From the IMG/VR virus record IMGVR_UViG_3300030616_000016, positions 62,001 to 126,000 of that record: a stretch of DNA of 64,000 nucleotides, one strand, 5' to 3'. Below the pieces are notes generated by a model, which saw nothing but the letters and a program-made list of their open reading frames with translations, searched no databases and was not told the DNA's origin. Both the position numbers and the translations under genes were made by a program. This document shows positions 327-59,629 of this stretch, piece by piece. The first letter of the stretch is position 1, and each line of letters begins with the position of its first letter.

Positions 327-1502
327 TTATAATTTACCGGTCATAAATTTTATTGCTTTGCCAAATGAATCAACCTTATTAAGTTCAATTACATTGGCTA
401 CTTGGAACTCATTCCTGCCTTGTTTAGTTTTATTAGTACGTATACGTCCTCTAACAAGACATGTCTTGTTTGCTTCGCCAAGTTCTTCAAGTGTTTTCTT
501 CAAAGATTTCTCTGCTTTTTTATATGAAACAACTGGAGCTATGCTATGTCCATCTTCCATATAAAGAATACGCCTCTTTGATTCTTCAACTATGAATAAC
601 TGGCAGGCAACGGTTACGAACATCCAATGTTGCAATCTGCTATCTTCGCCCATAGCTACTCTAGATGCATCAGATAAAGTTTTAATATCACAATCCTTTA
701 TCCTCTCAAGTCTTTCTTTGTTGTCATCTAGAAATGGTGCGCTTTCAGATAGACTGAAACCAAGATGATAAAGCTCTTCTTTATGATACACATTTTTATC
801 CATAGGTTCACAGTCTAACATTTCTATATTAAATACTTCGTTCTTCTTTTCTTCGTCATTCAGAGTCTTGCGTTTCATTATCTTGTTAGACTCTTTTTTT
901 ATGTTCTCAATATTAATGACAATCCAATTTCTATTTGGCTTACCATCTTCTGTAGTTTCAGCTATTGGATCAAAGAATCCAATCTTTGCCAAAGCATATA
1001 AGGCTGATGTATATATGGTTTTATAATTATTAATATAAGCCCATATAAACTCTGTTAGACTGTCGAATGGTCCATACTTTTTAACCAGTTCTTCAATAGC
1101 TGAGGCAGCATTGCTATTCACATAGCGTATACCATCCATGCCTACTCTTATGCCGTACCCATTCTCTAATGGCTGGCATATTTGTGAGCATCCTTCTATA
1201 CTTGGCGGTCTAACTTCAAGCCCAGCAGATGTCGCTTCTTCAATATATTTACTGACAGTAGATTTGTTGTTGGACCTGGCATTAATCATTGCGCTTATGT
1301 ATTCTTCAAGATATAAGCATTTTAGGTATGCAGTCTTATAGGTAAGATAGGCATAGCTTACACTATGTGAGTTTTTTGATATAAGACCACTAGATAAGAT
1401 ATAATTATGGGGCTCGTTTTCCATTCTAATATTATATAGTCTACGCTTACCTAGTTTTCTTATCTTATTTATCTTTACTTTCTTCAATTGCAAGTTTTGC
1501 AC
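327..1502 (-). CDS. dnaE: DNA polymerase III alpha, C-terminal half, preceded by split-intein C-fragment (IntC about 1371-1487; likely TTG start at 1487)
   Basis: KKVKINKIRKLGKRRLYNIRMENEPHNYILSSGLISKN|SHSVSYAYLTYKTAYLK: intein blocks F/G ending in Asn with +1 Ser, followed by DnaE SH..Y..YLK, EY.SAM and HhH motifs. Confidence 0.93.
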   Translation of the reverse strand: MQNLQLKKVKINKIRKLGKRRLYNIRMENEPHNYILSSGLISKNSHSVSYAYLTYKTAYLKCLYLEEYISAMINARSNNKSTVSKYIEEATSAGLEVRPPSIEGCSQICQPLENGYGIRVGMDGIRYVNSNAASAIEELVKKYGPFDSLTEFIWAYINNYKTIYTSALYALAKIGFFDPIAETTEDGKPNRNWIVINIENIKKESNKIMKRKTLNDEEKKNEVFNIEMLDCEPMDKNVYHKEELYHLGFSLSESAPFLDDNKERLERIKDCDIKTLSDASRVAMGEDSRLQHWMFVTVACQLFIVEESKRRILYMEDGHSIAPVVSYKKAEKSLKKTLEELGEANKTCLVRGRIRTNKTKQGRNEFQVANVIELNKVDSFGKAIKFMTGKL

Positions 1503-2334
1503 GATTGAATTTTCTCCTCATACAAAATTCAGCATTATTATACATGAGTCTTAGCACTTTTGTTAAATCCCTTTCTATATACCACTCTATATAATATAAA
1601 ATACCTCTTTGCTGTGAGGGTATTTTATAATCTATATCTAGTATATGGAATAGCATATATGATATTTGTGATACAACAGATTTCGTTCCTAGAAATCTTA
1701 TGCACCATTTTTTATTAACGCTATTTCTATATAGAGTTCCATCACCATCAAAAAATCCTCTTAGCATATGTCCAAATAAATCTATTTTTATAGGAGGTAA
1801 TACTGCATCATTTGTTTTATCACTTGTAAAACCAAATCTGTAAAGATCTTCAACCATTTTTGGAGATGCTACTGTAATTCTGGACATTGGTTTTACATTG
1901 ACTTCTCTGCCTGCTATTATCTTTTTACCTCCAGGTATTTCTATTATCTTGTTATCAGTTTTCCATTGTTTTTTAACATAGTTGATTATATATCTGTCGC
2001 TCTTGCTAAGAGATAGGGATATTGAATTGTCTTTTTCTACTAACCATCCGTCGGCCAATAGCAATCCAATTACATATGCCTTGTGTTGGTTATCTATTTT
2101 GCTAAAGTAGAAATGATCAACACTATTATATTCCCACTTCTCTCTTGCTCTTATGCCAAATCTATGTAAAAGATCGTAGATAGTTTTAGTAGTCTTGAAC
2201 TTAAAGTTCAAGCTTTTAAGTATCTCGCTACCAGATTTCCCTTTGGTATAGAGTTCTATAATCTTTTTCTCATCTTCTAATGTCATTTTCTTATTTGGCG
2301 GATTTTTTGGTTTGTAGACCATATAATACTCCAA
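1465..2334 (-). CDS. Free-standing LAGLIDADG homing endonuclease with N-terminal HTH-like region
   Basis: Two LAGLIDADG-like motifs, YVIGLLLADGW and MLRGFFDGDG; lies between the two dnaE halves. Confidence 0.88.
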   Translation of the reverse strand: MEYYMVYKPKNPPNKKMTLEDEKKIIELYTKGKSGSEILKSLNFKFKTTKTIYDLLHRFGIRAREKWEYNSVDHFYFSKIDNQHKAYVIGLLLADGWLVEKDNSISLSLSKSDRYIINYVKKQWKTDNKIIEIPGGKKIIAGREVNVKPMSRITVASPKMVEDLYRFGFTSDKTNDAVLPPIKIDLFGHMLRGFFDGDGTLYRNSVNKKWCIRFLGTKSVVSQISYMLFHILDIDYKIPSQQRGILYYIEWYIERDLTKVLRLMYNNAEFCMRRKFNRAKLAIEESKDK

Positions 2335-2361
2335 GATAATATGTATATGTAATACTCACAT

Positions 2362-2390
2362 ATTATATCATATTACTTGTAGCATGTCAA
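2362..2390 (-). promoter_or_regulatory. Consensus sigma70 promoter embedded in the last codons of dnaE-N
   Basis: Minus strand TTGACA-tgctacaagtaatatga (17 nt)-TATAAT, upstream of the endonuclease start at 2334. Confidence 0.8.
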
Positions 2391-5049
2391 GACCCATATT
2401 ATATATTTCTTCTACAGTATGCATTTCATTGTCTGTGCACATAAATTTATGTTCTAGTGATACAATTTCTTTTTTGCCATCTGATAATTCAATTTCGAAA
2501 GCGTCCATTTCACCAGAATCTATTACTTCGACTAGATTGTCATTAACTATATTACCATTTTTGAAGCTTTGGCCTACAATATTTTCACGACCAGAAATAC
2601 TCTTAATGGTTTTATTAATGATTTTTTCACTGTCGTATATTCTAAGCTTAGTTGATGGTGACAAACATGCATTAAAACCATAGCGCGAAAATGTTTCTAT
2701 TTGACTCCATATTCGGGAAGATATATCCTCAGACACGCCAGTATTTTTGGCTAAGTCTGCTATAAACTGAGGTTTAATTTCTGCTATGATATCTGCCTTC
2801 TTCTTACCAACACCGTATCTAAGATAGTCAGCCTTGGCTGCAGTCCATCCACATAAGTCTCTTGCAATCTTGATTATCTGTTCTTGATATACAATGACTC
2901 CATAGGTCTTTTTGAGTACACTACCTAGTTCAGGTGTAATCAGTTCTATATCGTCAATGCCATGCTTACGGTCAATGAAGGATTGAACCATGTTCTTTCC
3001 GTCAGCTCCCTTTGCACCAAGTGGACCTGGTCTATACAAAGCAATCATATCAGATATTTCACTAATACTATCTGGTTTGAGTTGCTTAATGTAGTTGCCC
3101 ATACCACTGGATCCAATTTGGAAGACCTCATTCCTCATACTACCTTCTCTGAGAAATCTAAATACCCTGGAGTCTTCTAGGTCAATCTCTCTAATGTTGA
3201 TTTTGTTATCATGTCTTTCATTAATAAACCTAATAGCTTCATCTACTATATCGAGAGTCTTAAGTCCTAGAAAATCAAGCTTTAATAGCCCAGTGTGTTC
3301 TGCATCATCTTTATCTAGCTGTGTTATGATAGAATATTCACCCTGGGATCTTTGGCATGCTAATGGATGATTTTCTATCAAAGAATCTTTTGATACAATG
3401 ACGCCACCAGCATGCTTACTCCATGCCGTTTTGGCTCCTTCCATCTTTACCATTGTATTGTAATAGTCTTCACGATAAACGTCGTCTTTGAGTGCTTCCT
3501 GCAACTCTGGAACGACCTCATGCAGCTCAGTTATGTTTAAGGTAATGTCTTCGTCATATTTGGCACATATATGTGATCTACAATTAGAATATTGTTCTTC
3601 CCATGATTTGGTTCTTGGGTTAAATATATTGAGCGCTGGGAATACTCGTTTTGCAAGAAAACGAGGCTTCATTGTTTGTAGTGTAGCAACTCTACAAACA
3701 TTGTCTTGTCCAAATAGATCTACGAGATGAGCAAACATCTTAGGCTGTGTACTAGAAGGAAAGTCAATATCAAAGTCCGGTGCACTCTTTCTATCTGGAT
3801 TAAGAAATCTTTCAAAGTATAAGTCATACTTTTCTGGATCAATACTTGTGATGTCAAGAGCGCGAGCTACTCTTGAGCTTGCACCACTTCCGCGTCCGTC
3901 TCCAACGAGCACATCATGATTCTTTGCCCAGTTTACTGATTCCCATGTTATAAGGAAATAGTTATCAAATCCTAAGTCATGTATAACTTTAAGCTCATAC
4001 TCAATTTGGTCTACTAATTTTTGCCTATGTTCTTTGTCTGCATCAGGCCAGGCTTTATCTATACCAGCCATGGCTTGATTTCTTAATTCTTGTTGTGGAT
4101 TTGCTACACCTGGCAACCCAGGTACATCAATATCTTTTTTGGATATACAATAATTGCACTTTTCAGCTACTTCAAGTGTGTTTGTAACAGGCACTTCTGT
4201 TCCAATACACTCAACCATTTCTTCATAGCTTTTGATATATCCTTCTCCGGTACGACCTGTGTATTCTTTGCTGTTATAATATAGCCCATTAGTACATAGG
4301 AATATATCGTGAGCCCTCTTATCTTCTTTATTAAGATAGTGAGCATCACAAGATGCTACTGTTTTGACACCAAATGAATCTGCAATTTCCATTAATTCAT
4401 TTGCTACATCAATTTCTTTAACTTCTTTGTCTCCATACATTCCGTCAAAGCCGTTGTTCATGACCTCAACATAAAAATCATCGCCAAACTCTTTCTTCAT
4501 AAGTTGCATATAATCTACTATGCTTTGTTGAGAGTCTGTCTGTCCACCAAGTAGTCTAGATACTGAGCCTGCAAGAAAGCCACCAAGACACCCAGTTAGT
4601 ACAACTAATCCCTCTTTATGTGCAAATAAATCTTTCAACCATATTCTTGGTTTGGAATAAAAACCATATAAATGGCCCATAGAACTCAGGTATGAAAGAT
4701 TTTTGTATCCTTGTCTTGATTTTGCCAAAAGTGTCAGATGGTAACTTTCTATTTTCTTTACTTCTTCTTTAAGATCTGCGGCAGAAGATGGTACAAATAG
4801 CTCGCCATCGTCATTATAAGCTTTTGGATCTTCATGAGTAATGTATGCTTCCATACCCAGCATTGGTTTGATTCCTGCTTCATTACATGCATCAGAGAAC
4901 TTAACAACGCCAGCAATATTTCCATGATCTGTCATGGCTATTGCTTGTTGACCAAGACTTTTAGCTTTGTTAGCAGCATCTTCTGGCTTGATGATAGAAT
5001 CGTTGAGTGAGAACATAGTATGTAGATGCAAGTTAACAAAATTAGACAT
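2368..5049 (-). CDS. dnaE: DNA polymerase III alpha, N-terminal half (PHP + polymerase core), ending in a 99-aa split-intein N-fragment (2371-2667)
   Basis: PHP motifs HLHTMFS, TDHG, DAHY; core motifs GRGSGASS, PDFDIDF, KLDFLGL, VYQEQI; then YGFNA|CLSPSTK...SLEHKF intein blocks A and B. Confidence 0.96.
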   Translation of the reverse strand: MSNFVNLHLHTMFSLNDSIIKPEDAANKAKSLGQQAIAMTDHGNIAGVVKFSDACNEAGIKPMLGMEAYITHEDPKAYNDDGELFVPSSAADLKEEVKKIESYHLTLLAKSRQGYKNLSYLSSMGHLYGFYSKPRIWLKDLFAHKEGLVVLTGCLGGFLAGSVSRLLGGQTDSQQSIVDYMQLMKKEFGDDFYVEVMNNGFDGMYGDKEVKEIDVANELMEIADSFGVKTVASCDAHYLNKEDKRAHDIFLCTNGLYYNSKEYTGRTGEGYIKSYEEMVECIGTEVPVTNTLEVAEKCNYCISKKDIDVPGLPGVANPQQELRNQAMAGIDKAWPDADKEHRQKLVDQIEYELKVIHDLGFDNYFLITWESVNWAKNHDVLVGDGRGSGASSRVARALDITSIDPEKYDLYFERFLNPDRKSAPDFDIDFPSSTQPKMFAHLVDLFGQDNVCRVATLQTMKPRFLAKRVFPALNIFNPRTKSWEEQYSNCRSHICAKYDEDITLNITELHEVVPELQEALKDDVYREDYYNTMVKMEGAKTAWSKHAGGVIVSKDSLIENHPLACQRSQGEYSIITQLDKDDAEHTGLLKLDFLGLKTLDIVDEAIRFINERHDNKINIREIDLEDSRVFRFLREGSMRNEVFQIGSSGMGNYIKQLKPDSISEISDMIALYRPGPLGAKGADGKNMVQSFIDRKHGIDDIELITPELGSVLKKTYGVIVYQEQIIKIARDLCGWTAAKADYLRYGVGKKKADIIAEIKPQFIADLAKNTGVSEDISSRIWSQIETFSRYGFNACLSPSTKLRIYDSEKIINKTIKSISGRENIVGQSFKNGNIVNDNLVEVIDSGEMDAFEIELSDGKKEIVSLEHKFMCTDNEMHTVEEIYNMGLDMLQVI

Positions 5050-9437: not shown

Positions 9438-10586
9438 TTAGAACGAGTCAGCGCTTTCCTTTTCTCTAACTGCTCTTTTTATTTGACTACTTAGTCTTGC
9501 GTGTGATTGCTTTTCTTTTGCTATGTCTTCTAATATTTCTATATCTTTACTGCTTAACAACTTTCTTACTCTGATAATATCAAGGTGAGCAGCATATGAT
9601 AGAGTTGCAAACAATGTTTCCAACTCCTTTTTATCACATTCATAATTCATGACTTTATGGATCCACCCTTTATATTGCTTATATTTTTTGGATCCTATTC
9701 CACTAATTCTTCTTGCCATTGTTCTACGACTTATGTCAACTCCAAATACAACACCCAATGCACTTATTCTATTTATACCGCTTAACATAACTTTTGACTT
9801 ATGTTTATTAAATCTCATTCCTTCTACTGCTACGGCCTTATTTGCGCACTTGAAAATATCATTTATCCATTCTTTCCAGAATCTTTTAGATATGTAAGGC
9901 ATAGAGCTACTTAGTTGTATGTCGTCAGCATATCTTGAATATCTGATCCTTCCATATGGCCAACCCATGCTTGACATTGTTATATCAAACTTTCTCATAC
10001 ATAGATTTGATATTACAGGACTTGATGGAGCACCTTGTGGTAATCCATTTGTCATTGAAACAAGAGGTATTAATGGTATCTTATATTTTCTGCAGCATGT
10101 ATCTACAGTATGTAATGATATAAGCATCTTTCTAATATGTTTTGCTTTAATAGATGGAAAGAAGTTCTTAATATCCATACTAATCATTATTCTAGCTCCA
10201 TCATGTATCGACTGTAATTTGTTAATTGCAGTTTGGAAGCGTCTAGAACGTCTTAGTATTCTTCTAAAAGATTCTTGTGTTGTAAACAGCGGTTTTGGAC
10301 TATATGCTAAGCTATGTCCATTTCTGTCATACTTTTGCAATAGCCATGAGACATATCTTTGTGCCGTTTTTAAGTCTTCGTCTGGCTCATGTAAATGCCT
10401 GATGCCACCTGATCTTTTTCTTATCATGTGGTGTGTATATCTTGAGTCTCTATCGTTTGAGTTTTGTTGTAAGTCTTCAAACAATTGCTGAATTGTAATA
10501 CCAGATGGCAAGACTAGACTTAGAAAATTGTCAGGAGTTATATCATGAAGTCTCAGTTTCTTCTTTATCTGATTCTGTTCCATCAT
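9438..10586 (-). CDS. Retron-type reverse transcriptase
   Basis: IRKRSGGIRHLHEPDEDLKTAQR, MDIKNFFPSI, GLPQGAPSSPVISN, YSRYADDI, FNKHKSK; ALG at the position of the retron VTG motif. Confidence 0.88.
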   Translation of the reverse strand: MMEQNQIKKKLRLHDITPDNFLSLVLPSGITIQQLFEDLQQNSNDRDSRYTHHMIRKRSGGIRHLHEPDEDLKTAQRYVSWLLQKYDRNGHSLAYSPKPLFTTQESFRRILRRSRRFQTAINKLQSIHDGARIMISMDIKNFFPSIKAKHIRKMLISLHTVDTCCRKYKIPLIPLVSMTNGLPQGAPSSPVISNLCMRKFDITMSSMGWPYGRIRYSRYADDIQLSSSMPYISKRFWKEWINDIFKCANKAVAVEGMRFNKHKSKVMLSGINRISALGVVFGVDISRRTMARRISGIGSKKYKQYKGWIHKVMNYECDKKELETLFATLSYAAHLDIIRVRKLLSSKDIEILEDIAKEKQSHARLSSQIKRAVREKESADSF

Positions 10587-11667
10587 CTCCGCCTTCCGAT
10601 TCCGTATTGTCAGATATTAATTTGGTTATATCATTGTTTGCTGCAAATTCATATAGTGCTATTATTCCTTGCACGCTTTCTTCGCCTATGTAGTAGTATC
10701 CACCACGCTTGGTGATTTTACCATCTACAATCATTTGATCTACTAAAAATCTTTCTTCACTAAACCCATGATTAAAGATGAATGGATATTTTACTTCGGC
10801 TCCCTCCGGCATAGTACCAGACTGTCTAGTCTTATTGATTTTCATGTAATGCATGAAGCCAATAATTTTCTCTTTCTTCTTTCCATCTTCTTCTACAATG
10901 GCAGCTGGAGCTTCGCTTTTGCTACCTCTACGAGTCATCAGCCTTACGTGTGTAAAATGCTTAACCGCATTTCCTCCCTTAACGAGAGTTAGGTCACCAT
11001 ATCCACCAATATTGGTGTATATTTGACCAATCATTATGATTGTTGTGTTTGTCTTTGCTGCAGGACCACAAGCAAGTCTTAGGAACTGGCTCATTTTTCT
11101 TTGAAGAACACCGATGGTATCATCGTTTAGGCTACGGTTAGTACCGGTTTTACTTTCGAGTTCTGCGCGTGGAAGCAGACCGCCAATTGAATCAATAACT
11201 ACGATGTCTACTAAATTCTCTCTCATAATGTCGAGACATTTATCTAGCATGTTCTCCATCGTATCTTTCTCAATTATAAAGAGCTCATCTGTATTGACTC
11301 CTTGTACTTTTAACCACTCTTTATCCAATGCTTCTTCTGCATCAACCCAGCATGCAATACCATGGTTTTTCTGAACTTCTGCTACACATCTTGCACATGC
11401 AGTGCCTTTAGCTGTCTGTTCTGGTCCGGCGATTGTAACAATTTTACCTCTAGGAAAACCTCCGCCTAAATAGTCATCCCAGCCTTTAATGCCGGTTGAT
11501 ATTCTACCGTAATCCTCTAGTCCAAAATGTACAATTTGATTTTCATCATCGATGTCTTTGTTAATAGAAGTCGCTACTCTTTTTAGACGAGCCATCTTCT
11601 CTGCTTTTATATCTTGTGGAGATACAATCTTTTCTTCACTAGTATCTTTGCTTTTTCTCTTAGCCAT
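10543..11667 (-). CDS. recA: RecA recombinase with non-canonical P-loop
   Basis: ISTG...D..LGGGFPRGKIV, WVDAEEALD, VVIDSIGGLLPRAEL, QRKMSQFLR, GGNAVKH; Walker A reads GPEQTAKGT. Confidence 0.93.
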   Translation of the reverse strand: MAKRKSKDTSEEKIVSPQDIKAEKMARLKRVATSINKDIDDENQIVHFGLEDYGRISTGIKGWDDYLGGGFPRGKIVTIAGPEQTAKGTACARCVAEVQKNHGIACWVDAEEALDKEWLKVQGVNTDELFIIEKDTMENMLDKCLDIMRENLVDIVVIDSIGGLLPRAELESKTGTNRSLNDDTIGVLQRKMSQFLRLACGPAAKTNTTIIMIGQIYTNIGGYGDLTLVKGGNAVKHFTHVRLMTRRGSKSEAPAAIVEEDGKKKEKIIGFMHYMKINKTRQSGTMPEGAEVKYPFIFNHGFSEERFLVDQMIVDGKITKRGGYYYIGEESVQGIIALYEFAANNDITKLISDNTESEGGDDGTESDKEETETS

Positions 11668-49158: not shown

Positions 49159-49174
49159 CTTTATCTCCGATAAT

Positions 49175-49534
49175 AATTCATTCTATACATATGGTATATT
49201 TATTCTTCGTGATTCATTCGTTTGGCATGGTATTTCAATTTGCTTGATTCGCTAATGAGTAGTGGTGTTTCAATATTTTTGGCTCATTTTAATACTTTGT
49301 TCTATTCTTTCATATGATTCATTCCTTGGTCCTGGTATTTTAGGGCTGATGGCTCATTCAGTACAATTGGTATTTTCGTGTTCATAATTCATTCTTGTTG
49401 TTTGGTATTTCCACCAAGATGACTCATTCTAATAAAGTGGTTGTTCAAATAAAGTGATTCATTCTTCCACGTTGATGTATTCAATTGCATAGTTCATTCT
49501 TTTCTTGTGATATTTCGTGTAGATTGATTCATTC
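49175..49534 (-). repeat. TIGR-like dual-repeat array 1: 10 units, 35-nt period (one of 36 nt)
   Basis: Plus-strand motif GATTCATTC-like at 49175, 49211, 49246, 49281, 49316, 49351, 49386, 49421, 49456, 49491 and 49526, with a GGTATTTY-like motif 18 nt after each; the intervening segments (9 nt, one of 10) are all different. Confidence 0.92.
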
Positions 49535-50609: not shown

Positions 50610-50858
50610 TTTGAGCCGCAATTATTACGCAGGATTCAATTGAGAGCAGAGGTAGTTGGTGTCCAATGTCTGTTGGTCAATCCTGCTTACACATCCCAGA
50701 CTTGTTCAAAGTGTGGTTATGTCCACAAGCTCAATCGGAATGGTGAGATATTTAATTGCAGGAATTGTGGCTGCAAAGGGGATGCTGATTTAAATGCATC
50801 TCGAAATATCTTGAATCTTGGATTGGCTCAGGAGTCTATAGTCCCTGAAAAAACATAA
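50610..50858 (+). pseudogene. C-terminal remnant of a TnpB gene
   Basis: VNPAYTSQTCSKCG...FNCRNCG...DADLNASRNIL; no N-terminal part. Confidence 0.85.
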
Positions 50859-50890
50859 AAGAATATTCCTCTATAAATATTCTAACTATT

Positions 50891-51476
50891 GGTGTTTTCC
50901 TTTTTGTGATTCATTCATTATAACTGATGTTTCTATAAGTGTGATTCATTCTTTAATAATGGTAATTTAATGGCTTTGATTCATTTTTCCCCAATGGTAT
51001 TTCTTATGTAATTATTCATTCTTTATACTTGATATTGTGACTACATTGATTCATTTGTATGGACTGGTATTTCATATTTAGTGATTCACTCACTTATTTT
51101 GGTATTTCCATGGGTGTGGTTCATTCCGGCATGATGGTACTTCTAGGCAATTAATTCATTCTTATAGTCTGGTACATTGTCCTATCTGATTCATTCCTTC
51201 TTTATGGTATTTCGTGACTGATAATTCATTCTGTTCAGCTGGTATTTTGGAGCTTATGATTCGTTCGCAATTAATGGTACTTTCTGATTTATAACTCATT
51301 TTCTCCGAATGGTATTTCAGATTGAGTGATTCATTTGTTCATGTTGAATTATTGTGCAAAGTGATTCATTCTCGCGACATGGTATTTTGGGGCTAATGAT
51401 TCATTCATAATATATGATATTTTTTGGATAATGATTCGTTCATGTTGCATGGTAATTCTAGGACGCTGACTCGCTC
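50891..51476 (-). repeat. TIGR-like dual-repeat array 2: about 17 units with an exact 35-nt period
   Basis: GATTCATTC-like motif at 50908 and every 35 nt up to 51468 (17 copies); GGTATTTY-like motif at 50891 and every 35 nt up to 51451; unique 9-nt segments between. Confidence 0.95.
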
Positions 51477-51525
51477 CAAGGGCTTGTAATCTTAACGGAT
51501 TTGGCTTATGCTATTTATTAGTAAA

Positions 51526-51554
51526 ACAGGGCAAGCCATTGTAGCTTGCCCTGT
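51526..51554 (-). terminator. 11-bp perfect hairpin between the Nop-domain gene and array 2
   Basis: Minus strand ACAGGGCAAGC-TACAATG-GCTTGCCCTGT followed by TTT. Confidence 0.7.
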
Positions 51555-51569
51555 AATATATTCTTCATA

Positions 51570-52580
51570 TTACCAAGGCCAGTTAGGGACCTCGATCTTA
51601 TGAACATGTTTCAAGTGATCGAATGCATAAGGCTGGAAAGGCGCTTCGACGCCATAATGAGCACGATAAGCAACTTCCCACCAGTGAGACAGGAATATCT
51701 TAGTAGCCCATCTCTTACTTCTCATATGAATCTGACTATTGGGGAGCTTGCCTTCGCGATATATTGCCCTCTGTTTATGACCAGGCACTCTTCGAAGAAC
51801 TTCTCGTGCAATATGCGCATATTCCTTGGCTTCATTCTTACGCGACTCGATAATCTTCCTTTCAACAACAAGATGTCCATAGAGATCTTTTGGATTGTTG
51901 CATGTCATATTGAAAGACTCACCGATTTTCCAGCAGAGTGTTTTCAGTTCTGAATTCCAGGGACGCATTGACAGACCTCTGTAAAGCGTCTTGCCTGTAT
52001 GAACTCCGCCTCCTTTCTGTAATGAGAGACGAAGTGCGGTAGCTGCTTTGATTCCTCCGGCTTCTTGTATCGCATTTGCTACCTTAATAGCATCTTCTTC
52101 AGATACTCTTCTTGTACTATCAGGATTAATACCGGCTTCGTCAACCATGATTTCTCTTGTAACTTTCTTGCCAAGCCAGCGCTTTCCGTCTACAAGACCA
52201 GCATAGCTATAGATATGTCCTGGAGTCTTAGCTTTGTCCATATCTATATGGGCAATAAGACCGGCGCTGATAACAGGGCCAATACCTACAACTGATTGAG
52301 CCCATGTACCAATTTTTGTTGATAATGAGAAATGATTGAGCGCGAGCTTCACCTGATTCTCAAGACGCTCCGCATTCTTAAGAAACCAATCAAGCACTTC
52401 CATTGGAGGGTCGTCTACGCCCTGCTCTGCTGCTCTAAGCTGACCAGCAAGCCTGATTCTCTGGTTCTGCATGGTATAATAACTATCTACCAGATAGCGG
52501 GCTTCCTGACGCGTAATCTTTCTTGACGCGTTTCTTATGTCTTTACCTACTCTTTCAATAATTTCTTCAATAGCCATCAC
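51570..52580 (-). CDS. IS110/Nop-domain protein lacking a RuvC domain (TasA-like RNA-guided DNA binder)
   Basis: Coiled coil YYTMQNQRIRLAGQLR; HhH-like SVVGIGPVISAGLIAHI; IYSYAGL; RPWNSELKTLCWKIGESF; QIHMRSKRWATKIFL; no DEDD N-terminus and no SG serine after YAGL. Confidence 0.8.
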   Translation of the reverse strand: MMAIEEIIERVGKDIRNASRKITRQEARYLVDSYYTMQNQRIRLAGQLRAAEQGVDDPPMEVLDWFLKNAERLENQVKLALNHFSLSTKIGTWAQSVVGIGPVISAGLIAHIDMDKAKTPGHIYSYAGLVDGKRWLGKKVTREIMVDEAGINPDSTRRVSEEDAIKVANAIQEAGGIKAATALRLSLQKGGGVHTGKTLYRGLSMRPWNSELKTLCWKIGESFNMTCNNPKDLYGHLVVERKIIESRKNEAKEYAHIAREVLRRVPGHKQRAIYREGKLPNSQIHMRSKRWATKIFLSHWWEVAYRAHYGVEAPFQPYAFDHLKHVHKIEVPNWPW

Positions 52581-52598: not shown

Positions 52599-53756
52599 TT
52601 AAAGCATGTTTACCATGCTATTATATAGACCCGCATACTCTTGCGGGCCTGAACGTTTGCCTGGGTTATCGGACAATTTAACAGTAGGAACAAAGCCCTC
52701 TCTATTATATGAACAGGCAGTCATTTTAATAACGATATTAAGAGGATCTACTCCAACATCATTAGTGAAATTAGTGCCTATACCATATACTGTTTTGATT
52801 CTTTTGTTTACATATTCTTCTATCTCAAGAACCTTGTCAACATCAAGAGAGTCTGAGAATACAATGGTTTTTGTACTTGGATCTATACCAAGGCTCTCAT
52901 AGTGTTTTATTATTTTGTCAGCAAATTCCATAGGATCGCCTGAATCTTGCCTTACACCATCCCAAAGACTCGCTCTGACATAATCAAATGATCTTAGAAA
53001 CCAATCAGTTGTATAAGTATCAGTAAGCGCTATGCCTAGTTTGCCCTTATATGTCTCTGCCCATTTATCAAGGGCAATAGAAGTAGCCATTTGAGGACCA
53101 AATATGGCGCCGTGGAACATAAACCACTCATGAGCTTGTGTGCCAATTGGTCGCATGTTATGAGTGGTTGCTAATAATACATTACTTGTACCAAGACAGT
53201 ATTGTGAAATTTGTTTTCTTGTAGACATGTCATCCAGAAGTTCATTCTGTACACCAAATGAAAATCTGCGTCTGGTTCCGAATTCTATGAAGTTGACTTT
53301 GTGCTTGATGAGTTTGTCAACCTTGTCTACATTTGTTTTATATCTTTCTTTCCTGAACTTAGGCGCTATACCAAGCTTAAGATAGTATAGCTCGCTAATA
53401 GCCGCTAATAGCGGTACTTCCCATAGTATAGCAGAATACCATGGCCCGCATATTTCTACTTTGAGATCTTCGTCTGTTTGTGTAACACATACTTCATTAG
53501 GATTGAATCGATGATGTCGTAGGTATTCTAGATATGTTGAATCAAAGACTCCAATCTTTCGCATAGCTGTAATACTATCGTCTATAAAGTATGTATGTTG
53601 CATATGATCAATAAACTCATTTAATTCCTTTTGCATACTTTCAGGGAACTCAGTCTTTGTTCTTGACTTGAATTCATATTTTACTAATGCAGATGGATAG
53701 TGTTTAAGTACTGCATTTTGCATGGCGAACTTATAGAAATCATTGTCTGCTGCCAT
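52599..53756 (-). CDS. pncB: Nicotinate phosphoribosyltransferase
   Basis: D.YKFAM, LWEVPLLA, EFGTRRRFS, GTSNV, GTQAHEW, LTDTY, GVRQDSGDP, VFSDSL, GIGT, VKLSDNPGK. Confidence 0.93.
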   Translation of the reverse strand: MAADNDFYKFAMQNAVLKHYPSALVKYEFKSRTKTEFPESMQKELNEFIDHMQHTYFIDDSITAMRKIGVFDSTYLEYLRHHRFNPNEVCVTQTDEDLKVEICGPWYSAILWEVPLLAAISELYYLKLGIAPKFRKERYKTNVDKVDKLIKHKVNFIEFGTRRRFSFGVQNELLDDMSTRKQISQYCLGTSNVLLATTHNMRPIGTQAHEWFMFHGAIFGPQMATSIALDKWAETYKGKLGIALTDTYTTDWFLRSFDYVRASLWDGVRQDSGDPMEFADKIIKHYESLGIDPSTKTIVFSDSLDVDKVLEIEEYVNKRIKTVYGIGTNFTNDVGVDPLNIVIKMTACSYNREGFVPTVKLSDNPGKRSGPQEYAGLYNSMVNML

Positions 53757-56679: not shown

Positions 56680-57048
56680 TTAGTCAATGTACCCATTTTT
56701 CTTAAAGCTAACTAATACTATCTTATTTTTCTCGCGATCATGTTGAAGCTTGATGTATACTTTGGTATTACCTATTACTGTTTTGTATACATCCATATAT
56801 TTTCTTACGTATAGATTTGCTTTTGTTGCATAAGCAAAATCTGGCTCTTTTAAGTTGAGCAGAGTTTCTACAACTTGGCTTTTTGAAAAGCTAAAGTCTT
56901 TTTGCGCATGATATCTCGCATCTCTTAATATCATATATCTATCATTCTTAATGAGAGTTTTTGCGCCTTCTAACTCAATAGAAGGCATGGCTCTCCTTTT
57001 TATGACAGGGAGATCTATGTCATTATTATTTGCTAAAGATACTTTCAC
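56680..57048 (-). CDS. MqsR-like mRNA interferase toxin
   Basis: LKEPDF...MDVYK...VYIKL...IVLVSFKK parallels the MqsR LSESDF...QDVY...VYLK...LIVSFKE pattern. Confidence 0.7.
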   Translation of the reverse strand: MKVSLANNNDIDLPVIKRRAMPSIELEGAKTLIKNDRYMILRDARYHAQKDFSFSKSQVVETLLNLKEPDFAYATKANLYVRKYMDVYKTVIGNTKVYIKLQHDREKNKIVLVSFKKNGYID

Positions 57049-57596: not shown

Positions 57597-57941
57597 TTAT
57601 TTCGCTTCACGGACATCAATCCCAAGTTTGTCTTTAATCCACTTTGCAACAAGATGTCTGTGACAAAACTTCGTTGATCCTTCCCAGCATAATAGTATGG
57701 GTTCGCCGTCTACTAGCTCATGAATTTCATCATAAACTTCAGCGGCATTTAATTTACTTAGAATCTTGTCGTATTCTCGTACATAGGCTATTTTATCCAA
57801 GTTTCTTCTATAGGACTGTAATAATTCTTGTGATGGAGCTAATGTACGATATGTTGAGCCTATATAGAATTTTGGAGGAAATAGCGCTATAGACACTGCA
57901 TCTGGATGAGTACCATAATTTCTGAAGTATGAAGTTTTCAA
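57597..57941 (-). CDS. DUF488-family protein
   Basis: MKTSYF, VSIA..PP, LAPS, LLCWE...FCHRHLVAKW. Confidence 0.8.
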   Translation of the reverse strand: MKTSYFRNYGTHPDAVSIALFPPKFYIGSTYRTLAPSQELLQSYRRNLDKIAYVREYDKILSKLNAAEVYDEIHELVDGEPILLCWEGSTKFCHRHLVAKWIKDKLGIDVREAK

Positions 57942-58855: not shown

Positions 58856-59629
58856 TTACTCCCTTTCTAGACAGAATGTCTCCATCATGTGATTTTGAAC
58901 TCCTCTGTATTGCCATTGAAAAGTACAATTGACTCCCTTAATCTTAGGAAACTCTCCAACATTTCTATCTTGTATTTTGCTATTTCTTGAGTCACTCTGA
59001 ATAGTTATGAAAATTAACTTACAATCGCTTTTGTTCACGAGATGTTTGACTGAAGATATTCTTTGATGCGTTAGTGGACCATTATAATCTAAGTGTGCTA
59101 CATCAATGTCTATACGACTACATTTCTTGAGAAATGAATCGACATTCTGGTTTATCAGTTTTACATCCTTACTTAGCTTGCTCTTTATCGAGTTTTCGCA
59201 GATTGTATATATACTGTTTTTCGCCTCAAAGGCTAGAATGTTGTATGTATCTACTCCAACCATGTTATTAATTATTACTAATTCAGTTCCTAGGTATGGT
59301 AGACATAGAAATTTGATGCTTCTTAGTCCTTTTGAGTGAATAATATTGCCTATGCTAGTAATGCTATACCGCTTACCTATTGTGGCATATTTATCATTAT
59401 TAGCGTCAATATTATTCTTTTTCTTAATGATTGGAAGGTTGGTTCTAACTTTTGTTTTGATGTTATGCAAATGTGTCTCAACAGTTCTTGGCTTTATATC
59501 AAGCTTAGCTGATATTTGAGGAATAGAAAGACCACGCATGAATAGATCAACATGTTCTTTTTCTCTCTTTGTAAACAAATGCTTTTTATTAGAGACATCT
59601 GACGGCAAATGAACTTTTGTCCTATTCAT
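58856..59629 (-). CDS. LuxR-type HTH fused to a Rossmann methyltransferase-like domain
   Basis: FTKREKE...GLSIPQISAKLDIKPRTVETHLHNIKTK; then FLCLPY, AFE, IDVAHLDYNG. Confidence 0.55.
   Translation of the reverse strand: MNRTKVHLPSDVSNKKHLFTKREKEHVDLFMRGLSIPQISAKLDIKPRTVETHLHNIKTKVRTNLPIIKKKNNIDANNDKYATIGKRYSITSIGNIIHSKGLRSIKFLCLPYLGTELVIINNMVGVDTYNILAFEAKNSIYTICENSIKSKLSKDVKLINQNVDSFLKKCSRIDIDVAHLDYNGPLTHQRISSVKHLVNKSDCKLIFITIQSDSRNSKIQDRNVGEFPKIKGVNCTFQWQYRGVQNHMMETFCLERE

What the first reader, a model, noticed from the sequence alone, without database searches (positions are those of the whole stretch)
50891..52580. TIGR-Tas-like RNA-guided locus: 35-nt dual-repeat, dual-spacer array downstream of a Nop/IS110-like gene
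Seen: about 17 units at an exact 35-nt period. On the gene (minus) strand each unit reads GAATGAATC-[9 nt]-RAAATACC-[9 nt]. Every 9-nt segment starts with A, the other 8 nt vary, and no segment is repeated. A period of 35 is not a multiple of 3, so this is not a coding repeat, and the motifs are too short for CRISPR. The upstream gene carries the IS110-Tnp/Nop RNA-binding fold motifs. Established: TIGR-Tas systems (described 2025) pair Nop-domain proteins with arrays of about 36-nt units holding two 9-nt spacers that read opposite strands of a DNA target. Inference: this phage processes the array into about 35-nt two-spacer guide RNAs. The system class is known, but this 35-nt variant and its targets may not be described.
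Basis: partly seen in the sequence, partly recalled or inferred. Interest (0 to 1): 0.95.

Follow-up and report, generated by a model that had tools for sequence, protein, structure and literature searches.

The report
Phage TIGR-TasA guide RNA locus
This jumbo-phage locus is a genuine but ordinary member of the TIGR-Tas family (described in 2025): a nuclease-free TasA protein with two arrays encoding 28 short two-spacer guide RNAs whose natural targets remain unknown.

Summary

**Array.** On the minus strand, 18 units at an exact 35-nt period follow a 335-aa gene.

**Protein.** It passes NCBI's curated TIGR-Tas model (158.8 bits, cut-off 100) and fails the IS110 model. Its best sequence and fold matches are the solved TasR and TasH structures. 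It has no nuclease domain, so it is TasA. It keeps the Tyr/His pair that processes guide RNA in SpTasH.

**RNA-level evidence.** Neighbouring edge repeats covary so that the two half-repeats flanking each unit can pair. Of 54 pairs, 52 are compatible and 7 are compensatory G-C (permutation p ≤ 1e-4).

**Relatives.** Adjacent arrays occur in 70 of 80 related viral loci, and 10 of those have a 35-nt period. The 35-nt unit is therefore not a new variant.

**Targets.** No guide matches 87% of the phage's own genome above chance.

**Most likely function.** TasA processes the arrays itself into 35-nt guides that direct DNA binding without cleavage, that is, repression or blocking.

The parts
51570..52577 (-). 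tasA gene (335 aa from the ATG; a GTG lies one codon upstream at 52580). It consists of a coiled coil plus a Nop domain, with no nuclease domain. A 65-70-aa four-helix insertion sits at residues ~132-204. The Tyr317/His324 processing dyad is present.
   Evidence: NCBIfam NF052498 TIGR_Tas_endo 158.8 bits (cut-off 100), E = 1.8e-46; IS110 model 25.1 bits (cut-off 140). Family profile against PDB: TasR 9mty 2.5e-22, TasH 2.4e-10, IS621 3.5e-6. AlphaFold2 model pLDDT 94.6. Foldseek top hits are TasR and TasH, probability 1.0. Dyad alignment: and PMC13421893.
51522..51554 (-). Strong hairpin (13 pairs in the predicted fold; the consensus scan counted an 11-pair stem with 7 G-C) followed by UUUU, between the tasA stop codon and the first array unit. 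It looks like a terminator or attenuator, or a 3'-end stabiliser of the tasA mRNA.
   Evidence: Free energy -22.7 kcal/mol, z = -5.8. None of 29 relatives with downstream arrays has a comparable hairpin.
50882..51511 (-). TIGR array 1: 18 units of exactly 35 nt. The first unit has a degenerate edge repeat. Each unit reads edge repeat GAATGAATCA, 8 variable nt, loop repeat RAAATACCA, 8 variable nt.
50848..50881 (-). 3' end of array 1: a truncated edge repeat (AAT), a weak A+T-rich hairpin and a U-run.
   Evidence: Read directly from the sequence. The fold is not better than shuffles (z = -0.9), so terminator function is inferred only from the U-run and from the published pattern.
49174..49534 (-). 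TIGR array 2: 10 units with the same repeats (the last unit is 36 nt) plus a full terminal edge repeat. It begins at the stop codon of ORF 50170-49529 and ends 15 nt before the next ORF's start codon (49158). It is somewhat more degenerate than array 1.

Best explanation
This is a dual-repeat TIGR-TasA system of an uncultivated 231.6-kb jumbo phage.

**Proposed mechanism.** The two arrays are transcribed on the minus strand. Array 1 is most likely read through from tasA past a hairpin. Array 2 lies inside a downstream operon. TasA binds each unit through the box D (AA) and box C (YCA) ends of the edge and loop repeats. It cuts the precursor inside each edge repeat (AAUG^AAUCA) with its Tyr317/His324 dyad. 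The products are 28 guides of 35 nt (one of 36 nt) of the form 5'-AAUCA-N8R-AAAUACCA-N8R-AAUG-3'. The two half-edges at the ends of a guide form two base pairs. A TasA dimer carrying one guide recognises a 16-18-bp DNA site that reads spacer A followed by the reverse complement of spacer B. The protein has no nuclease domain, so the outcome is binding without cleavage: transcription or replication block.

**Shown here:** the anatomy, family membership, conserved processing residues and RNA-level covariation.

**Inferred from characterised relatives:** transcription, the exact cut site, dimer binding, the DNA-binding outcome and repression.

**Unknown:** the targets.
For: **Protein**
- It passes the curated NCBIfam TIGR-Tas equivalog and fails the IS110 equivalog.
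- The family profile hits TasR 9mty at 2.5e-22 and TasH at 2.4e-10. Alignment starts only after their N-terminal RuvC or HNH domains.
- The model has pLDDT 94.6, and its top Foldseek hits are TasR and TasH.
- Tyr317 and His324 align with SpTasH Y289 and H296, the published processing residues (PMC13421893). His is invariant in 67/67 relatives and Tyr is present in 63/67.

**Array**
- The two-motif pattern hits 21 times against 0.18 expected.
- All 56 spacers are unique.

**Covariation**
- Positions 3-4 of the downstream edge repeat pair with positions 8-7 of the upstream one: 50 Watson-Crick, 2 G-U and 2 mismatches of 54, with 7 compensatory G-C pairs.
- The same-repeat phase and the reversed phase each give 8 mismatches.
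- Shuffling repeat order gives p <= 1e-4.
- These two pairs correspond by position to the two pairs described for the TasR structure (PMC12045711). The correspondence comes from lining up the 9-nt edge repeats by hand.
- The same covariation is seen in 8 of 16 related arrays tested at permutation p < 0.05; a ninth low value, L117, is discounted.

**Relatives**
- 70 of 80 related viral loci carry an adjacent array with a 33-39-nt period and GA...CCA repeats with 8-nt spacers.

**Published support**
- The cut-site analogy rests on the synthetic SpTasH and TaTasR guides in Faure Table S3.
- The target geometry A + rc(B) was verified in the same table.
- TasA acts as a repressor in the Xu 2026 preprint.
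Against: - No expression or processing data exist for this phage.
- A strong terminator-like hairpin sits between tasA and array 1, and no promoter could be identified.
- In the loop repeat the box D/box C pair would be A.C in most units, not a Watson-Crick pair.
- No target was found. In 200.8 kb (87%) of the phage's own genome there is no exact hit. There is 1 hit at one mismatch (null 0.83) and 23 at two mismatches (null 20.9). Nothing above chance was found in 820 kb of other loci.
- Array 2 is more degenerate than array 1 and holds both of the covariation mismatches.
- The role of the 65-70-aa insertion is unknown.
Confidence: 0.88

Rival explanations
1. The system works as above, but TasA does not act alone as a passive binder. 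It recruits a nuclease or other effector in trans, for example one of the phage's several HNH proteins or an activity carried by the 65-70-aa insertion. Targets would then be destroyed or modified rather than repressed.
For: The four-helix insertion at residues ~132-204 is present in 35 of 67 relatives and absent in the rest. By the profile alignment it enters between SpTasH residue 190 and the next conserved helix, a few residues after K180 and H182, which that paper places near the guide's ends (PMC13421893). Several HNH genes lie elsewhere on the contig. Faure et al. report occasional TasA-ParB operons, so accessory partners do occur.
Against: No neighbouring gene is conserved with tasA in 96 related loci. 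The insertion matches no Pfam family. Published TasA proteins repress without cleavage.
Confidence: 0.1
2. The locus is a decaying relic. The arrays are no longer expressed or used, and the sequence pattern is inherited.
For: There is a terminator-like hairpin between the gene and array 1. A TnpB remnant abuts the array. Array 2 has degenerate loop repeats and one 36-nt unit. No targets were found.
Against: The ORF is intact and keeps all invariant family residues, including the processing dyad. Compensatory changes between adjacent edge repeats indicate continued selection on RNA pairing. All 56 spacers are distinct.
Confidence: 0.06
3. The repeats act at the DNA level, as iterons or a partition or binding-site array for some protein, and the adjacent gene is an IS110-type transposase remnant.
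For: PHROGs and Pfam label the protein 'transposase'. Regularly spaced short motifs are typical of iterons.
Against: The protein fails the IS110 model (25 bits against a cut-off of 140) and lacks the DEDD domain. All units are on one strand, co-oriented with the gene. Covariation is between positions in different repeats, in the phase expected for a processed RNA, which a DNA-binding-site model does not predict. The gene-array association is conserved in 70 of 80 loci.
Confidence: 0.02

Closest known systems
Dual-repeat TIGR-TasA systems (Faure et al. 2025, Science, PMC12045711, e.g. Flavonifractor plautii FpTasA; Xu et al. 2026 preprint 10.64898/2026.09.09.750476)
   Same: A solo coiled-coil plus Nop protein without a nuclease. 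The adjacent array alternates edge and loop repeats with two short spacers per unit. It is phage-encoded. The Tyr/His processing loop is present, and the guide structure is unstructured (no stem-loop).
   Different: The unit is 35 nt rather than the typical 36 nt, because the loop repeat is one base shorter. The repeats are A+T-rich derivatives (AAUGAAUCA instead of NGCGAGCCA), with A-U replacing the G-C pairs. The Nop core carries a 65-70-aa helical insertion, whereas dual-repeat Tas proteins are described as compact. There are two arrays separated by unrelated genes, and a hairpin lies between the gene and the array.
Salicola phage CGphi29 TIGR-TasH (SpTasH; PDB 9w03, 9w04, 21kl)
   Same: The variable spacers are 8 nt followed by a conserved purine. 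The edge repeat has the same layout (AGCG^AGCCA against AAUG^AAUCA). The Y289/H296 processing dyad aligns with Tyr317/His324. It is phage-borne.
   Different: SpTasH has an N-terminal HNH nuclease and cuts DNA, whereas this protein has none. Sequence similarity is low (phmmer E = 6.9e-5).
Thermoproteota TIGR-TasR (TaTasR; PDB 9mty)
   Same: This is the best sequence and fold match. The two base pairs between half-edge repeats seen in its structure are the ones that covary here. The target geometry is A + rc(B).
   Different: TaTasR has an N-terminal RuvC nuclease with no counterpart here, 9-nt fully variable spacers and UG/CCA boxes.
IS110-family bridge-RNA recombinases (IS621, PDB 8wt6)
   Same: A shared Nop-like RNA-binding domain, which is why Pfam, PHROGs and some database names call this protein a transposase.
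   Different: There is no DEDD catalytic domain, no single bridge RNA and no transposon ends. It scores far below the IS110 curated cut-off.

Membership tests
TIGR-Tas (dual-repeat) | Tas protein: coiled-coil dimerisation hairpin plus Nop RNA-binding domain | tested here: met
   NCBIfam NF052498 158.8 bits against a cut-off of 100. Profile against TasR 9mty 2.5e-22. Model pLDDT 94.6 with long helices 23-51 and 59-85. Foldseek top hits are TasR and TasH, probability 1.0, TM 0.45-0.70.
TIGR-Tas (dual-repeat) | Adjacent array of two distinct alternating 8-12-nt repeats separated by two short (8-9-nt, rarely longer) unique spacers, with a unit of about 36 nt and many units | tested here: met
   18 + 10 units of 35 nt with repeats of 10 and 9 nt (or 9 and 8 by the published convention). 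The variable parts are 8 nt and all 56 are unique.
TIGR-Tas (dual-repeat) | Box D at the start and box C (CCA-like) at the end of both repeats, similar in edge and loop | tested here: met
   Both repeats start R-AA and end YCA (edge UCA, loop mostly CCA). The same GA...CCA layout is seen in relatives. The loop box D/C pair is A.C in most units, a deviation.
TIGR-Tas (dual-repeat) | The two half-edge repeats flanking one unit form base pairs supported by covariation | tested here: met
   52 of 54 pairs are compatible and 7 are compensatory G-C, with p <= 1e-4. The same-repeat and reversed phases are worse. Replicated in 8 of 16 relatives tested.
TIGR-Tas (dual-repeat) | Tyr/His metal-independent processing dyad on the C-terminal loop | tested here: met
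   Tyr317 and His324 align with SpTasH Y289 and H296 (PMC13421893). Conserved 63/67 and 67/67. Catalysis itself was not tested.
TIGR-Tas (dual-repeat) | The array starts with a truncated edge repeat and ends with a truncated edge repeat plus a terminator | tested here: inconclusive
   The first edge repeat is degenerate and the last is truncated to AAT, followed by a U-run. The hairpin there is weak (z = -0.9). Array 2 has no terminator.
TIGR-Tas (dual-repeat) | The array is transcribed and processed to unit-length RNAs bound by Tas, and guides direct binding to DNA reading A + rc(B) | not testable with these tools
   This needs small-RNA sequencing and binding assays. No natural target was found by computation.
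TasA subtype | No HNH or RuvC domain | tested here: met
   There is no nuclease family in Pfam. Only about 25 residues precede the coiled coil. Alignments to TasR and TasH begin after their nuclease domains.
IS110-family RNA-guided transposase | N-terminal DEDD (RuvC-like) catalytic domain plus C-terminal domain, scoring above the curated family cut-off | tested here: not met
   NF033542 scores 25.1 bits against a cut-off of 140. Only the PF02371 segment matches, with no DEDD domain.
CRISPR array | One repeat of about 23-47 nt alternating with one spacer of similar length | tested here: not met
   There are two different 9-10-nt repeats and 8-nt spacers. The phage's true CRISPR arrays (61-nt period) lie elsewhere.

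The most novel reading that the evidence does not exclude
The phage carries two independent RNA-guided systems aimed at different DNA. One is a type I-E CRISPR-Cas module with 22 spacers of 48% G+C. The other is TIGR-TasA with 56 half-spacers of 34.5% G+C, the same as the phage itself (35.8%). TIGR-TasA would then be a non-destructive silencer of A+T-rich relatives or competitor phages (or of A+T-rich host loci), while CRISPR-Cas destroys G+C-richer DNA. A clade-specific 65-70-aa insertion in TasA would add a function not present in the characterised compact proteins.
Probability: 0.15. Interest if true: 0.55.

Novelty: new member of a known kind. Interest (0 to 1): 0.3.

Why it matters
The biological role and natural targets of TIGR-Tas systems are still open questions. 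This instance is well preserved and guide-rich: 28 guides in a nearly complete jumbo-phage genome that also carries CRISPR-Cas. It could serve as a test case once the host and the co-occurring phages of the same sample are available. The within-array covariation gives a cheap, sequence-only way to show that a candidate TIGR array is under RNA-level selection and to fix the phase of its units. Otherwise the locus adds no new principle. A curated NCBI model already recognises the protein, and published surveys list thousands of such arrays.

Tried and rejected
- **Tandem Repeats Finder:** misses the arrays.
- **Single-sequence AlphaFold2:** useless (pLDDT 42). The alignment-based run was used instead.
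- **GenBank phages:** blastn and tblastn of the locus and the protein found nothing.
- **Faure supplementary tables:** no mention of sample 3300030616, but Table S1 is truncated in the held copy. Whether this exact locus is already catalogued cannot be told.
- **Self-targeting:** I walked along the contig to 200.8 of 231.6 kb. Both spacer orders, gaps of 0-2 and the alternative unit phase gave only chance-level hits. The published geometry A + rc(B) was confirmed from Faure Table S3.
- **One guide scanned as a 16-mer through IMG/VR:** three scattered hits in unrelated contigs, not interpretable.
- **Two of the phage's CRISPR spacers scanned through IMG/VR, to find competitors:** only the arrays themselves.
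- **Link between the protein's long or short form and the unit length:** rejected. Periods of 35 and 36 nt occur in both forms.
- **Conservation of the neighbouring genes as accessory genes:** none in 96 loci.
- **Conservation of the gene-array hairpin:** none of 29 relatives has one.
- **Rfam:** no match.
- **Covariation within the loop repeat:** none seen.
- **Full TnpB gene on the plus strand:** only the 72-aa C-terminal piece is recognisable.

Full report

Yes. Read on the minus strand, the region downstream of ORF 52577-51570 consists of units of exactly 35 nt. A pattern made of the two conserved motifs with eight free bases between them, allowing three mismatches, occurs 21 times in the 64-kb window. 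All hits are on the minus strand, against 0.18 expected from shuffles. Tandem Repeats Finder does not report the array, because more than half of each unit is variable.

**2. Corrected anatomy**

- Array 1 runs from 51511 to 50882: 17 clear units preceded by one unit with a degenerate edge repeat.
- Each unit reads GAATGAATCA, 8 variable nt, RAAATACCA, 8 variable nt.
It belongs to the YCA motif that ends both repeats.
- Using the published convention for the Salicola phage system (Faure supplementary legend), the unit is edge AAUGAAUCA, spacer N8R, loop AAAUACCA, spacer N8R.
- All 56 variable octamers are different.
It has ten units with the same repeats, the last of 36 nt, plus a complete terminal edge repeat.
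- Array 2 begins at the stop codon of an unrelated ORF and ends 15 nt before the start codon of the next one.
- Between the arrays lie a DUF7831 gene, a 213-aa ORF and a plus-strand TnpB remnant.
- No further units occur in 200.8 kb of the phage genome.

**3. The protein**

- It passes NCBI's curated equivalog model for TIGR-Tas proteins: NF052498, 158.8 bits against a cut-off of 100.
- It fails the IS110 transposase model: 25.1 bits against a cut-off of 140.
- A profile of 67 relatives hits TaTasR (PDB 9mty) at 2.5e-22, SpTasH at 2.4e-10 and the IS110-family IS621 at only 3.5e-6.
- The alignments start after residue ~114 of TasR and ~65-88 of TasH, that is, after their nuclease domains. Only about 25 residues precede the coiled coil here.
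- Pfam finds no nuclease domain. The protein is therefore TasA.
- An alignment-based AlphaFold2 model is confident (pLDDT 94.6, pTM 0.90). Its best structural matches are TasR and TasH chains (probability 1.0, TM 0.45-0.70), followed at much weaker scores by IS621 and ISCro4.
- SpTasH processes its own precursor with Y289 and H296 (PMC13421893). In the profile alignment these fall on Tyr317 and His324. These are Tyr in 63 of 67 relatives and His in 67 of 67.
- Relative to the family core, the protein carries a 65-70-aa insertion of four helices at residues ~132-204. Thirty-five of 67 relatives have it and 32 have only 8-9 residues there.
- Xu et al. describe dual-repeat Tas proteins as compact, so this clade-level insertion is a modest peculiarity of unknown function.

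**4. Relatives**

- The protein family is large: 1122 proteins at E <= 0.001 in one search, and at least 549 loci in IMG/VR.
- Of 80 viral loci fetched, 70 have an adjacent periodic array. The period is 36 nt in 54, 35 in 10, 34 in 2, 37 in 2, and 33 or 39 in one each.
- Their consensus units have the same layout: edge GAGCGAGCCA, GAACGAGTCA or GAATGAATCA; eight variable bases; loop GA...CCA of 8-10 nt; eight variable bases.
- The 35-nt period is thus a minority length inside known variation. It does not track the long or short protein form.
- The closest relatives (50% and 47% identity), one from the same sample, also have 35-nt units.
- No neighbouring gene is conserved with tasA in 96 loci.

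**5. Evidence that the unit is an RNA with the published fold**

In the TasR structure, the 5' and 3' half-edge repeats of one guide form the box C/D pair and one further pair. I lined up the 9-nt edge repeats by hand (TaTasR UGCGAGCCA against AAUGAAUCA here). These two pairs then fall on two position pairs in the array:

- position 3 of the downstream edge repeat with position 8 of the upstream one;
- position 4 of the downstream edge repeat with position 7 of the upstream one.

Across both arrays, 50 of 54 such pairs are Watson-Crick, 2 are G-U and 2 are mismatches. Seven are G-C pairs where the consensus is A-U: every G at position 3 and every C at position 4 follows an upstream repeat with the matching C or G. 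Pairing within the same repeat, or in the opposite phase, gives 8 mismatches each. Shuffling the order of the repeats reaches the observed value in 1e-4 of trials or fewer. The same phase-specific pairing reaches permutation p < 0.05 in 8 of 16 related arrays tested. A ninth low value (L117) is discounted, because its trans, cis and wrong phases give 22, 24 and 25 mismatches and its chains mix in loop repeats. This argues against a DNA-level or relic explanation, and it fixes the unit phase.

**6. Mechanism**

Synthetic mature guides in Faure Table S3 read AGCCA-N8A-AGACAACCA-N8A-AGCG for SpTasH, and analogously for TaTasR. By analogy, the precursor here should be cut at AAUG^AAUCA. That gives 5'-AAUCA-N8R-AAAUACCA-N8R-AAUG-3', which is 35 nt. 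The units themselves have no stable fold, as expected for dual-repeat rather than stem-loop arrays.

The target geometry was checked in the same table. The optimised TasR target is spacer A followed by the reverse complement of spacer B, and the opposite order does not occur.

Without a nuclease, the expected outcome is binding. Two TasA proteins and two inactive TasR proteins have been shown to repress transcription.

A strong hairpin followed by UUUU lies between the tasA stop codon and array 1 (-22.7 kcal/mol, z = -5.8). None of 29 relatives has one. It leaves no room for a separate promoter. The array is therefore probably made by read-through, with the hairpin setting the ratio of protein to guide or capping the tasA mRNA. 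This is inference.

**7. Targets**

I extended the sequence along the contig: JGI 3300030616 Ga0272442_10000021, 231,647 bp. Window coordinates equal contig coordinates minus 62,000. This reached 200.8 kb, or 87%.

- For 28 guides with gaps of 0-2 there is no exact site.
- There is one site with one mismatch (null 0.83 +/- 0.69) and 23 with two mismatches (null 20.9 +/- 3.0).
- One guide scanned through IMG/VR gave three unrelated hits.
- Self-regulation of the phage's own genes is therefore unlikely. External targets cannot be identified with 16-18-bp sites and an unknown host.
- One hint remains: the spacers have 34.5% G+C, like the phage (35.8%), while the phage's CRISPR spacers have 48%.

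**8. Context**

The window is part of a jumbo phage. It encodes a split RNA polymerase beta subunit, DNA polymerase III alpha, RecA, a reverse transcriptase, NAD-salvage NAPRTase and many homing endonucleases. The same contig carries a type I-E CRISPR-Cas interference module with three arrays.

**9. Comparison and novelty**

The system works like, and is a member of, the dual-repeat TIGR-TasA class described in 2025 (PMC12045711) and surveyed in 2026. That survey covered 20,096 tas loci and 4,126 dual-repeat arrays. What is particular to this instance:

- the A+T-rich repeat variant, with A-U instead of G-C pairs;
- the one-base-shorter loop repeat;
- the helical insertion shared with half of its clade;
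- the split into two arrays;
- the hairpin;
- co-residence with CRISPR-Cas.

None of these is a new principle. I rate it a new member of a known kind, with interest 0.3.

Noticed in passing
window 50640-50858 (+): A 72-aa ORF is the C-terminal zinc-ribbon (TNB) domain of a TnpB/Cas12f-like protein (PF07282, E = 1.7e-18). It converges on the end of array 1. No other TnpB pieces are recognisable upstream, so it is a remnant of an IS200/605-type element lying between the two TIGR arrays.
   Followed up: partly
L032:4313-13446 (same contig, about 100 kb from the window): The phage carries a type I-E-like CRISPR-Cas interference module: Cas3, Cse1, Cse2, a Cas6e-like protein, Cas7 and Cas5. No Cas1 or Cas2 was seen within 10 kb. 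It has three arrays (5, 12 and 8 repeats; 61-nt period; 32-nt spacers). Two spacers are duplicated. Two spacers scanned against IMG/VR found only the arrays themselves.
   Followed up: partly
L032 CRISPR repeats versus window 50882-51511: The CRISPR repeat ends in ...GGGGATGAATC. It shares the 7-mer ATGAATC with the TIGR edge repeat GAATGAATCA. My rough post hoc estimate of the chance probability is about 1% (not computed in a call). The same CRISPR repeat occurs in a cellular genome, so this is probably coincidence, but it is unexplained.
   Followed up: no
L037 (JANQHV010000669.1, SAR324 cluster MAG): The phage's CRISPR repeat core (a 23-nt pattern) matches exactly 25 times, at the same 61-nt period, in an array on a SAR324 metagenome-assembled genome contig (46% G+C). 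The first bases of the repeat differ. This is a weak clue to the host or to the donor of the CRISPR system. No cross-targeting was found between that array and the phage.
   Followed up: partly
window 9438-10586 (-) and 10543-11667 (-): A reverse transcriptase gene (RVT_1, E = 7.6e-20) lies directly next to a RecA-like gene in the replication module. Its type (group II intron, retron, DGR or other) was not determined.
   Followed up: no
window 52599-53756 (-): A nicotinate phosphoribosyltransferase gene (NAPRTase, E = 9e-57) lies immediately upstream of tasA. Such a gene would fit an NAD+-salvage (counter-defence) role; this reading is from my own knowledge and was not tested.
   Followed up: no
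L028:16700-17491 (same contig): A metallo-beta-lactamase-fold gene matches the anti-Pycsar Apyc1 family (precomputed Pfam PF23023). It is a candidate anti-defence gene.
   Followed up: no
window 56680-56988 (-), 57597-57941 (-), 58856-59629 (-): Small genes with precomputed Pfam hits to MqsR toxin, DUF488 and a GerE/LuxR-type HTH regulator. They may be toxin-antitoxin-like or regulatory genes in the same minus-strand gene block.
   Followed up: no
window 327-5049 (-) and L026:10434-12488: DNA polymerase III alpha appears split by a LAGLIDADG endonuclease gene. A Volactin-family gene carries an intein. Several free-standing HNH genes are present. The genome is rich in selfish elements.
   Followed up: no
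L019:6120-6135: This is an exact 16-nt match to the target predicted for the third guide of array 1. It sits at a stop/start gene junction of an unrelated, G+C-rich 112-kb viral contig. It is a single hit and not distinguishable from chance.
   Followed up: partly
L013:4859-5086 and L094: Two distantly related phage loci use the identical edge repeat GAATGAATCA but with longer loop repeats (units of 36-38 nt). L013's protein is 42% identical, and its contig is 211 kb.
   Followed up: no
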